A stretch of 63,686 nucleotides of DNA, counting the filler, from Hyphochytrium catenoides (lineage: Eukaryota; Protista; Hyphochytriomycota): the NCBI GenBank assembly GCA_900088475.1. It is 11 parts of 11 records of this genome, joined end to end, with 100 filler letters (N's around TTAATTAATTAA, not from the genome) between each part and the next. Parts side by side here need not be neighbours in the genome. Positions count along the whole stretch, not along the records: positions 43,059 to 44,658 come from FLMG01000509.1; 10 more parts are not named here. One strand, given 5' to 3'. This document shows, piece by piece, positions 43,059 to 44,658 of this stretch (positions within the stretch are counted from its first letter, which is position 1; the number at the start of each line of letters is the position of its first letter). The position numbers were made by a program, and so were the translations under genes. The notes beneath the pieces were generated by a model. The model saw only the letters and a list, made by a program, of their open reading frames with translations. It did not search any database and was not told where the DNA came from.

Positions 43059-43550
43059 AGCGACCCTATGCAGCTGAGAATGGCAGGCGAAAAGAGAGAG
43101 ACAGACTCTGGCCCTCTCTCCGAGAAAGAGGCGGCTCGCCTTATGATCGATTTTGTTTTGAAGATTGCTTATCACGCACGAGTTGTCCGTAACGCAGTGA
43201 ACTTTCAGGTCATCCCTCAGAATGCGGAAGAGATCCTTCAGTATGACGAAGACGGGAGGTATCTCTACACCATCAATGGCATTGGCGTAGAGGACCTCTT
43301 CTATGACGAACTAGAGGCCGTAGAAAGGGAGGAGACAGAAGAGAGGCTTACCCATCTTAGGAAGGTGAGCGACGCTGGCAAGTTGGTCCTTGTGGTGGAC
43401 TATGTGGATGATGGGAAGGGCTATCTGGGGCCCAACAGACAAAGAATTGATGACTTCTTGGACAAAGTTGCTGCGGAGAGATTTTACTGCTACGTTGCGA
43501 AGAGAGACAGAGAGTTAGACCGTGTGGTGAAGACTGGACTTTATTGCTGA
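43059..43550 (+). CDS. MJ1477/TM1410-family putative glycoside hydrolase (GH114/PelA-related), C-terminal half
   Basis: AARLMIDFVLKIAYHAR..VIPQNAEEIL..GIGVEDLFY..ETEERLTHL..GKLVLVVDYVDDG..RIDDF..YVAKRDRELD follows the TM1410-type consensus throughout. The 5' part is lost in the gap. Confidence 0.82.
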   Translation, partial: SDPMQLRMAGEKRETDSGPLSEKEAARLMIDFVLKIAYHARVVRNAVNFQVIPQNAEEILQYDEDGRYLYTINGIGVEDLFYDELEAVEREETEERLTHLRKVSDAGKLVLVVDYVDDGKGYLGPNRQRIDDFLDKVAAERFYCYVAKRDRELDRVVKTGLYC

Positions 43551-43908
43551 ATCACAGAGACAGACACGTCGACTCTGACAACAAAGGGCAGAAAGTAAAC
43601 AAGCAGAGCATAACTACGCAGAAGCGGGACAGGCGACATCACGGGCGGACCAGATGCGCAAGAAACCAAAAGGAAAATGAAGAGGAGAGATCTGCGCCTC
43701 CTTCCTCTTAGTGGTGCATCTATCTCTGTTTCTTGCTAAGCCTTATTTATGAAGCTACAGTTCGCGGCGGTGCAGTTTTCCGCATACTGAAGCTTTCTCT
43801 TCTCTCCCGTCCTTTGCATGGGGCGCATGAGGAACAGTGAAGGAGGGCCTTTCATGGAATGCTGACTGCCCTACCTCAGGTCTCAATGAGAGTGTGAAGA
43901 ACTATTCG

Positions 43909-44658
43909 TCAGCTCTGGAGATGGAGGTCCTCTTCCTTGGTAAACAGCTGATCTCTCTATGTTTGCCTTTCTTTCCTTTCTCCTACCTTTCCTGTCAAGA
44001 GAGTCTTCTTGGTAGCTGCCATAAAGAAGTATTTTCTGAAGGAAAGGAGCGCATTGTTCCTTCCTGATCTAGGATAGATGGGGAGCGCCTGGTAAGAGAG
44101 GAGAACAAGGGAGACGCTTTCATTGTAGGAAAATGATCACCAACGCCATAACATCTTTCATTTTATAAAATAAAAAGTAACGACTCATCATCATTCCTTG
44201 TTTTCTTTTTCTAATGACAGACTTCAGGGAAGGAAAGACGCTCCCGAAACCTAATAGATTTGCTCAAAGCCAATGAAACTTGAGCACAAGGCCACTGGGA
44301 GAGAAGAGAACGAGCAGAAGGAAAAGAGAAATTGAGAAGGATAACAAGAGAGAGAAAGAAGAAGATGACGAGAAGAAATGAAGAAAGTGGCGACCTTGAC
44401 TCTGCTCTAGGAGCCTGTTAGACTCCAAGTTGGCTCTGTTACCTCTGTTGACTCTCATTACTCTGCTAACCCTGTTGATGACTCCGTCGCCTGCGCTACC
44501 TCTGCGGAGTTCCTTTGGCTCTGTTGATACTGATGACTCTGTCTCTGCCGTCATCAGAGACCCAGGAAAAGATGAAGTCCATTGTTTGGCTCCTATCAAC
44601 ACTAAAGAGCAATTCCACCGGGAGTCTCTAAATGAATCTCTATTGCCGCGTTAGCGGA
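43909..44658 (-). CDS. 3' exons of an unidentified spliced gene
   Basis: Exons with GT/AG junctions: ..LLEQSQ|GAPIYPRSGRNNALLSFRKYFFMAATKKTLLTGK|LFTKEEDLHLQS*. Confidence 0.35.

What the first reader, a model, noticed from the sequence alone, without database searches (positions are those of the whole stretch)
43059..43550. Prokaryote-type TM1410/MJ1477 glycoside hydrolase in a eukaryotic contig: HGT candidate
The ORF tracks the Thermotoga TM1410 / archaeal MJ1477 family closely, including the VxDYVDDG and terminal RELD motifs. The family is related to GH114/PelA alpha-1,4-galactosaminidases that act on biofilm-type exopolysaccharides. The visible part is intronless but shares a 1.6-kb contig with putative spliced exons and host-like GA-rich sequence, which argues for integration over contamination. 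Inference: a role in degrading bacterial exopolysaccharide or remodelling the cell's own matrix.
Basis: partly seen in the sequence, partly recalled or inferred. Interest (0 to 1): 0.7.

Follow-up and report, generated by a model that had tools for sequence, protein, structure and literature searches.

The report
Bacterial-type sugar-cutting enzyme gene in a eukaryote
The stretch is the last 163 codons of an intact gene for a TM1410/MJ1477-type (CAZy GH191) glycoside hydrolase, a family otherwise seen only in bacteria and archaea here, sitting in eukaryote-like DNA and shared with one other unidentified eukaryote: a credible old gene transfer, but of a kind already known.

Summary
Window 43059-43550 (+) is an ORF open to the piece's left edge. 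It matches NCBIfam TIGR01370 (MJ1477/TM1410), E 7e-35, profile 177-312 of 315, and solved TM1410 (2AAM/9EUZ, now CAZy GH191), E 2e-23. VVDYVDDG, RELD, the catalytic Glu and every well-conserved family column in the covered part are kept. The Asp nucleophile lies beyond the edge.

The eukaryotic setting is supported indirectly. The only close relative among 1.84 billion representatives (P0001, 72-73% identical) lies on a 3.6-kb contig whose gene has a 97-nt GT..AG intron and a plant-like GH16 neighbour. The ORF and its flank have similar depth. Downstream, 1.1 kb holds nothing recognisable as a gene. A contig from a run guessed to be RNA carries a GT..AG joint inside the ORF.

The next relatives are at most 57% identical. 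Those whose context or name could be read are bacterial or archaeal. In a careful tree the two eukaryotic sequences form one clade (100/99) inside prokaryotic diversity. The donor is unresolved. Non-synonymous difference is 0.19 against saturated synonymous sites, so the gene has long been kept.

The substrate is untested, and TM1410 itself showed no activity on galactosaminogalactan. The relative has no visible export signal. The host lineage was not identified. Verdict: a new member of a known kind, of moderate interest.

The parts
43059..43547 (+). Last 163 codons of a GH191 (TIGR01370, MJ1477/TM1410 family) glycoside hydrolase gene. It is the C-terminal half of the (beta/alpha)8 barrel, and the 5' part is cut off by the piece's edge.
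   Evidence: It is 71-73% identical to P0001. pN is 0.187 against pS 0.90 versus the relative.
43548..43550 (+). TGA stop codon of the gene.
43290..43292 (+). Glu78 of the fragment (VEDLFY), equivalent to the general acid/base Glu225 of TmGH191.
   Evidence: Residue numbers come from PMC12054363 and were mapped through the alignments. The column is 100% Glu in the family.
43392..43415 (+). VVDYVDDG motif, with D114, Y115 and V116 nearly invariant in the family.
43509..43520 (+). RELD motif near the C-terminus.
43365..43557 (+). 193-nt interval with GT..AG ends, inside the coding exon and running past the stop codon. It is skipped in one 203-nt contig of run X4 (RNA by guess). The joined form would end ...LTHLRK plus six residues and then a stop.
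   Evidence: tables 5 and 8. The frame was read. The GT is not kept in the relative L001.
43551..44602 (.). Purine-rich 3' flank (3' UTR and intergenic) with no recognisable gene.
   Evidence: It is not conserved with L001.
44603..44658 (.). Edge of a high-copy repeat. Depth is 20-50 times that of the rest, and many contigs diverge at 44599-44605. It probably explains why the assembly ends here.
   Evidence: tables 2 and 7.

Best explanation
The ORF is the 3' end of a nuclear gene of a eukaryote. It encodes a GH191 glycoside hydrolase (TM1410/MJ1477 family, TIGR01370), a (beta/alpha)8-barrel enzyme with an Asp nucleophile and a Glu acid/base. An ancestor shared with at least one other, still unidentified eukaryote took the gene from a bacterium or archaeon long ago. 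Since then it has gained a spliceosomal intron (shown in the relative) and has been kept under purifying selection. By analogy with Env-GH191 and PelA it most likely cuts an alpha-1,4-linked galactosamine-rich polysaccharide by a retaining mechanism. Shown here: family membership, an intact acid/base residue, a eukaryotic setting for the relative, and the absence of close relatives elsewhere. Inferred: the direction and age of the transfer, the substrate, and where in the cell the enzyme works.
For: Family: E 7e-35; TM1410 E 2e-23; all conserved columns kept; Asp156/Glu225. Glu is present at 43290-43292. The Asp is present in relative P0001 as YLD, D54. Eukaryotic setting: in L001, exon 1 matches TIGR01370 positions 42-114 and exon 2 positions 120-312 (188.8 bits, above the 181.25 cut-off). 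The two exons are in different frames and separated by a 97-nt GTATGT..TAG interval that holds stops. The neighbour is a membrane-anchored GH16 whose best named hits are plant XTH proteins. In the window, 1.1 kb downstream has no gene, tRNA or terminator. ORF and flank depths are similar, and two forms occur at 220 against 212. A GT..AG joint on the + strand occurs in X4. Transfer: the exhaustive search gave P0001 at 73%, then 53%. The word search gave at most 57%, and the metagenome scan at most 50%. Contexts and names that could be read are prokaryotic. In the careful tree the pair has 100/99 support and sits inside a 97/84 group of prokaryotic sequences. Selection: pN 0.187, pS 0.90.
Against: The window's own 5' part, with the nucleophile, any intron and any signal peptide, is not in the piece. 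Eukaryotic origin of this very contig rests on the flank, on depth and on one short contig from a run that is RNA only by guess. The best DNA holder may be the sample the window was assembled from, so it is not independent support. Neither eukaryote could be named, because run and organism names were coded. The representative library has no taxonomy, so more distant eukaryotic members may be hidden among the 379 hits. The tree's root is assumed (P0005, a long branch). TM1410 showed no activity on or binding of galactosaminogalactan, so the substrate is open.
Confidence: 0.72

Rival explanations
1. The contig comes from a bacterial or archaeal contaminant of the sequenced sample.
For: The family is otherwise prokaryotic. 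The visible ORF has no obligatory intron. The 50% GC content is unremarkable.
Against: The ORF is followed by 1.1 kb without a gene, which is unlike prokaryotic gene density. There is no terminator after the stop. The nearest relative by far (72-73%) has a spliceosomal intron and eukaryote-type neighbours. The best prokaryotic match is only 57%. There is a GT..AG joint in X4, and depth is like the flank's.
Confidence: 0.05
2. The gene is old in eukaryotes and inherited vertically. It only looks isolated because the lineages that carry it are poorly sampled or because most lineages lost it.
For: Two eukaryotes with saturated synonymous divergence share it. The pair has a long stem and no resolved prokaryotic sister. 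GH114-type genes are reported in fungi, chlorophytes and brown algae.
Against: The exhaustive search shows no further sequence above 53% identity. The fragment matches prokaryotic TM1410 at E 2e-23, but no fungal GH114 structure such as Ega3 appeared even at E up to 1. The pair lies inside a supported prokaryotic group.
Confidence: 0.1
3. The gene is eukaryotic, but it belongs to a second eukaryote in the sample (prey, symbiont or co-cultured organism), not to the organism the genome is named for.
For: The assembly is very fragmented. Two forms differ at 14 of 205 bases in X2 and X3. A differently labelled organism B holds the locus at 95-99% likeness.
Against: Three runs of two samples, six years apart, in one study all hold it under the same organism label. 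There is nothing positive for a second organism.
Confidence: 0.1
4. The copy is a decaying or silenced relic whose transcript is spliced into a truncated, inactive form.
For: The only X4 contig on the locus skips 43365-43557. That removes beta-strands 7-8, the DYV and RELD motifs and the stop codon. No unspliced X4 contig was laid. 6 of the 14 listed differences in the ORF between the assembled forms are non-synonymous.
Against: There is no stop or frameshift in 163 codons. All conserved columns are kept. pN is far below pS against the relative, and the skipped part is the best conserved (77%). Contigs drop rare variants, and the depth there is only 4.
Confidence: 0.07

Closest known systems
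TM1410 of Thermotoga maritima (TmGH191; PDB 2AAM, 9EUZ, 9EUX)
   Same: Same family by sequence (E 2e-23, about 40% identity over 141 residues). The acid/base Glu and the PQN, DYVDDG and ELD motifs are shared. The Asp nucleophile motif YLD is shared by the relative P0001.
   Different: TM1410 is bacterial, and most prokaryotic homologues carry an export signal or lipobox. The eukaryotic relative has an intron and no visible signal. The eukaryotic pair has an insertion after the YLDxxD strand (10 residues in P0001, 4 more in the window). TM1410 showed no activity on galactosaminogalactan.
Env-GH191 (PDB 9EP5; 99% identical to a Myxococcus fulvus protein)
   Same: Same CAZy family. It is the only member with shown activity: it cuts Pel-type alpha-1,4-poly(N-acetyl)galactosamine and prefers GalN-rich stretches.
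   Different: It is much more distant from the window (E 8.6e-11, matched only to residue 119), so its substrate cannot simply be carried over.
MJ1477 of Methanocaldococcus jannaschii / NCBIfam TIGR01370
   Same: The window fragment matches the model's C-terminal 136 positions. The relative's exon 2 alone passes the curated cut-off.
   Different: Many JGI records still call family members 'cysteinyl-tRNA synthetase'. From my own knowledge, this goes back to an early claim for MJ1477 that was later given up. It is not a lead for function.
GH114 (Ega3 of Aspergillus fumigatus, Pfam PF03537) and GH166 (PelA hydrolase domain)
   Same: Same barrel fold and the same Asp/Glu pair, according to PMC12054363. 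Pfam PF03537 gives a weak match.
   Different: They are separate CAZy families. The fragment scores 17.3 bits against a cut-off of 27, and no Ega3 or PelA chain matched by sequence at E up to 1.
Bacteria-derived GH114 gene of Bracteacoccaceae green algae (PMC11811186)
   Same: This is a published case of the same kind of event: a prokaryote-type endo-alpha-1,4-polygalactosaminidase-like gene taken up by a narrow eukaryotic clade.
   Different: The family label (GH114) and the host are different. No sequence comparison was made here.

Membership tests
CAZy GH191 / NCBIfam TIGR01370 (MJ1477/TM1410 family) | Whole-protein score at or above the curated cut-off of the family model (181.25 bits) | tested here: inconclusive
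   The window fragment scores 120.5 bits on 136 of 315 profile positions, so the rest of the protein is missing rather than failing. The relative's exon 2 alone scores 188.8 bits, and exon 1 adds 48.9 bits on positions 42-114.
CAZy GH191 / NCBIfam TIGR01370 (MJ1477/TM1410 family) | Significant sequence similarity to the founding members TmGH191 and Env-GH191 | tested here: met
   E 1.7e-23 to TM1410 chains and 8.6e-11 to 9EP5.
CAZy GH191 / NCBIfam TIGR01370 (MJ1477/TM1410 family) | General acid/base Glu (Glu225 in TmGH191) | tested here: met
   Glu78 of the fragment, nt 43290-43292, in VEDLFY. It was mapped through, and the column is invariant.
CAZy GH191 / NCBIfam TIGR01370 (MJ1477/TM1410 family) | Nucleophile Asp (Asp156 in TmGH191, motif YLD) | not testable with these tools
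   It lies upstream of the piece's left edge. It is present in the relative P0001 (D54). A 1663-nt contig of run X1 reaches 1120 nt further upstream, but its letters could not be read here.
CAZy GH191 / NCBIfam TIGR01370 (MJ1477/TM1410 family) | (beta/alpha)8 barrel fold | not tested
   Inferred from sequence identity to a solved structure. No model was built, because half of the barrel is missing.
CAZy GH191 / NCBIfam TIGR01370 (MJ1477/TM1410 family) | Endo-alpha-1,4-galactosaminidase activity | not testable with these tools
   Shown only for Env-GH191 and not found for TmGH191.
Pfam PF03537 Glyco_hydro_114 | Score at or above the gathering threshold (27 bits) | tested here: not met
   The fragment scores 17.3 bits, E 0.003. 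The relative's exon 2 scores 47.4 bits. The Pfam model spans both GH114 and GH191-type proteins (all hits carry PF03537).
Horizontally acquired gene in a eukaryote | Nearest relatives outside the recipient clade are prokaryotic, and the recipient sequences nest among them | tested here: met
   for contexts and names. In the careful tree the pair has 100/99 support inside a 97/84 prokaryotic group. The rooting is assumed.
Horizontally acquired gene in a eukaryote | No broad distribution in other eukaryotes | tested here: inconclusive
   No sequence lies between 57% and 71% identity in 1.84 billion representatives or in the word search. The library carries no taxonomy, so distant eukaryotic members cannot be excluded.
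Horizontally acquired gene in a eukaryote | Physical integration in eukaryotic DNA (introns, eukaryotic neighbours, host-like depth) | tested here: met
   For the relative: an intron and a GH16 neighbour. For the window the evidence is indirect: a gene-free flank, similar depth, and a GT..AG joint in X4.

The most novel reading that the evidence does not exclude
This could be the first eukaryotic branch of GH191, and one that has changed its job. It has lost the export signal that most prokaryotic members carry, so it would work inside the cell. Its output would be set by splicing out a 193-nt intron-within-an-exon that removes the last two barrel strands and the stop codon.
Probability: 0.15. 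Interest if true: 0.55.

Novelty: new member of a known kind. Interest (0 to 1): 0.35.

Why it matters
GH191 was defined in 2025 from two bacterial enzymes. The one paper on it in the searched library does not mention eukaryotes. A eukaryotic lineage that has kept such a gene under selection since before two of its members diverged to saturation would extend the family's range. It would also add a clean, intron-bearing example to the list of prokaryote-to-eukaryote transfers of polysaccharide-active enzymes. It bears on how protists deal with cationic, galactosamine-rich biofilm polymers, or make such polymers themselves. It does not open a new kind of system. Similar transfers of GH114-type genes into algae are published, and the substrate of most GH191 members, TM1410 included, is still unknown.

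Tried and rejected
(1) Exact look-up of the window's 160-aa product found no record, so the missing 5' part could not be fetched. The X1 contig that holds it cannot be read with these tools.

(2) Naming the host failed. Run, organism and study names are coded. The paper search for the relative's run id found nothing. The relative's GH16 neighbour has only 30-37% identity to plant XTH proteins. An atlas lead to an Oomycota cluster scored 0.89, below the level that counts.

(3) The atlas search with the window fragment gave nothing usable (best 0.75).

(5) No Rfam, tRNA or terminator match of any weight was found on the piece, and the tandem-repeat scan gave three weak rows that I did not follow.

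(6) Flank ORFs as 'spliced exons' are rejected. They have no family match and no conservation with L001.

(7) P0131 is a 5572-aa hit with 26 matched stretches. It is a repeat-rich adhesin-like protein whose weak repeats add up, so it is not kin.

(8) P0133 as sister of the pair has only 70% support in a quick tree. Its cluster-mate sits among bacterial two-component genes.

(9) The DNA-run joint 43601 to 43673 (AG..AG, side 30) is taken as an assembly-graph effect, not an intron.

(10) The relative's two exons were searched one by one by reference and were never joined, so no search or fold of the joined protein was made.

Full report
**What is there.** The piece 43059-44658 begins inside an open reading frame on the + strand. 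The frame runs for 163 codons to a TGA at 43548-43550. Nothing upstream of 43059 is genome, so the frame is cut by the piece's edge.

The translation matches NCBIfam TIGR01370, 'MJ1477/TM1410 family putative glycoside hydrolase'. The match has E 7.2e-35 and 120.5 bits, with residues 16-156 on profile positions 177-312 of 315. The score is below the whole-protein cut-off of 181.25 bits only because 57% of the profile has no counterpart in the piece.

Against solved structures, the best matches are the three TM1410 entries (2AAM, 9EUZ, 9EUX) at E about 2e-23. By my count from the printed alignment, 57 of 141 positions are identical. Env-GH191 (9EP5) follows at E 8.6e-11. Pfam's broader Glyco_hydro_114 model gives only 17.3 bits.

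**What the family is.** A 2025 paper (PMC12054363) made TM1410 and an environmental enzyme the founders of a new CAZy family, GH191. GH191 shares the modified (beta/alpha)8 barrel and the Asp/Glu catalytic pair with GH114 (Ega3), GH135 (Sph3) and GH166 (PelA).

The putative catalytic residues of TmGH191 are Asp156 and Glu225. Mapping these through the alignments gives two results:
- Glu225 falls on the E of VENLFY. In the window this is Glu78 in VEDLFY, nt 43290-43292.
- Asp156 falls on YLD, which lies just upstream of the piece's edge. It is present in the closest relative (YLDIID, D54 of P0001).

In an alignment with 100 prokaryotic homologues, every column that is conserved in at least 85% of them and covered by the fragment is kept in the window.

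On function the paper is sobering. Env-GH191 cuts Pel-type alpha-1,4-poly(N-acetyl)galactosamine and prefers GalN-rich stretches. TM1410 neither bound nor cut fungal galactosaminogalactan.

**Is it a eukaryotic gene or a contaminant?** The word-index search found one close relative, P0001, at 71% identity over the whole fragment. P0001 lies on a 3615-base Logan contig, L001. Three features of L001 point to a eukaryote:
- The gene is in two pieces in different frames. L001:469-741 matches TIGR01370 positions 42-114 (48.9 bits). L001:839-1531 matches positions 120-312 (188.8 bits, above the cut-off on its own) (Pfam agrees).
- The 97 bases between them (742-838) start GTATGT, end TAG and contain stops. 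That is a spliceosomal intron.
- The contig carries CT and GAGC microsatellites. Its neighbour is a 469-aa membrane-anchored GH16 protein whose best named relatives are plant xyloglucan endotransglucosylases at 30-37% identity.

I searched the two exons one by one by reference and did not join them.

On the window's own piece the evidence is indirect.
- **Flank.** The ORF is followed by 1.1 kb that is purine-rich. It has no ORF above 112 aa, no family match, no tRNA, no Rfam match of weight and no terminator after the stop.
- **Depth.** In the public runs that hold the stretch, the ORF contig and the flank contigs have similar depth. X1 shows 7.1 against 5.2-9.1. X3 shows 360 against 261-284.
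- **Two forms.** Two forms differing at 14 of 205 bases stand at 220 against 212 in X3. This looks like two alleles or two young copies.
- **Spliced contig.** A 203-base contig from run X4 joins 43362 to 43556, with GT..AG ends once the cut is shifted by two. X4 carries another organism label, is 95-99% alike, and is RNA only by the tool's guess. If X4 is RNA, the locus is transcribed from the + strand and seen by a spliceosome.

The best DNA holder may be the very sample the window was assembled from, so it is no independent witness.

**Distribution and origin.** The exhaustive HMMER search of 1.84 billion representatives gave P0001 at 73% identity and then a drop to 53%. Only 8 proteins reached E 1e-30.
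- The word search with P0001 listed 120 of 677 hits, none above 57%. The named ones were Spirochaetes, Synechococcales, Acetothermia/Bipolaricaulota, Gammaproteobacteria, Methanomethylia and Njordarchaeia.
- The species-genome scan gave Spirochaetota, Aminicenantes and Planctomycetota MAGs at 41-54%.
- The metagenome scan gave nothing above 50%.
- The contigs of five of the closest non-eukaryotic hits (P0002, P0125, P0126 and P0284; P0124's contig holds only the gene) show dense operon-like gene order. They carry PIN/AF2212/TrkA genes, PKD-dockerin fusions or two-component systems.

In a careful maximum-likelihood tree (48 rows, 214 columns), the window and P0001 form a clade with support 100/99 on a stem of 0.56. 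The clade sits inside a 97/84-supported group of 43 rows. That group leaves out a Planctomycetota clade and the two distant rows P0004 and P0005. Inside the group the clade's position is an open polytomy (quick trees agree). So the donor is not resolved, and the root rests on a long outgroup branch.

Between the window and L001, synonymous sites are saturated (pS 0.90) while pN is 0.187. Only the coding part is alignable. Together this fits one old uptake before the two eukaryotes diverged, followed by long purifying selection.

**How it most likely works.** The fold and catalytic pair are shown or strongly implied, which points to a retaining glycoside hydrolase. The substrate is inferred by analogy with Env-GH191 and PelA: an alpha-1,4-linked, partly deacetylated galactosamine polymer. 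I put this at about one in three, given TM1410's negative assays.

The site of action is open. 46 of 54 full-length prokaryotic homologues start with a hydrophobic stretch, often with a lipobox-like Cys. The relative's exon 1 starts MAQMDPYNP..., 20 residues before the family's WxYQLQ start. It has an in-frame stop just upstream and no hydrophobic stretch. An unseen upstream exon cannot be excluded. As modelled, though, the eukaryotic protein would stay inside the cell.

**The odd splice.** The interval 43365-43557 that X4 skips is 193 nt long and lies wholly inside sequence that is clearly coding. It is the best-conserved part against L001 (77% in tblastx). It also includes the stop codon. 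The joined form would end ...LTHLRK, then six more residues and a stop. It would lack the DYV and RELD strands. The GT is not kept in L001. I read this as an intron-within-an-exon used in a minor or regulatory isoform. With one contig at depth 4 it is no more than a lead.

**Comparison and novelty.** This is a member of GH191/TIGR01370 on every defining feature that could be tested. The nucleophile, the fold and the activity could not be tested on this piece. GH114-type genes of bacterial origin in narrow eukaryotic clades are already published, in Bracteacoccaceae green algae (PMC11811186). GH114 genes are also listed for brown algae, chlorophytes and fungi (PMC11468063).

I found no paper that mentions a eukaryotic GH191, but the library is limited. 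It is therefore a new member of a known kind: a sound, moderately interesting transfer candidate, and not a new type of system.

**Limits.** The host lineage is unknown (names coded). The 5' half of the gene is missing. X4's nature is a guess. The representative library has no taxonomy.

Noticed in passing
window 43365-43557: One 203-nt contig of run X4 (RNA by guess, another organism label, 98.5% alike) joins 43364 to 43558 with GT..AG ends. It skips 193 nt of conserved coding sequence and the stop codon. No unspliced X4 contig was laid on the skipped part.
   Followed up: partly
window 43259-43463 and flank: Runs X2 and X3 hold two forms of the locus, differing at 14 of 205 bases, at near-equal depth (220 against 212 in X3). 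Of the 14 listed differences inside the ORF, 8 are synonymous and 6 are not. They could be alleles of a very heterozygous or mixed sample, or two young copies.
   Followed up: partly
window 44603-44658: Depth rises 20- to 50-fold, and several contigs with different continuations meet at 44599-44605. This is the edge of a high-copy repeat of unknown kind, with no Rfam or tRNA match.
   Followed up: partly
L001:1735-3144 (-): The neighbour of the relative's gene is a 469-aa protein with a short N-terminal part, one membrane span, a Ser/Gly/Thr-rich linker and a GH16 domain. It is only 30-37% identical to plant XTH proteins and has no close relative in 5.8 billion proteins.
   Followed up: partly
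L001:469-741 and prokaryotic homologues P0006-P0060: 46 of 54 full-length prokaryotic family members start with a hydrophobic, often lipobox-like N-terminus. The eukaryotic relative's first exon has none (highest 12-residue hydropathy 0.19).
   Followed up: yes
hits: Many JGI records name family members 'cysteinyl-tRNA synthetase' or '..., unknown class'. From my own knowledge, this label is left over from an early claim about MJ1477 and does not describe the function.
   Followed up: no
P0131: A 5572-aa repeat protein ranks ninth in the exhaustive search through 26 weak matches to residues 45-88 of the query. It looks like an RTX/cadherin-type adhesin, and the score is an artefact of summed repeats.
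   Followed up: yes
L002:8239-9664 and L003: The best prokaryotic match to the window (P0002, 57%) is a 242-aa form that lacks the N-terminal third of the barrel. It sits next to a PIN/AF2212-like pair in an archaeal-looking contig. It could be a truncated gene or a wrong start call.
   Followed up: no
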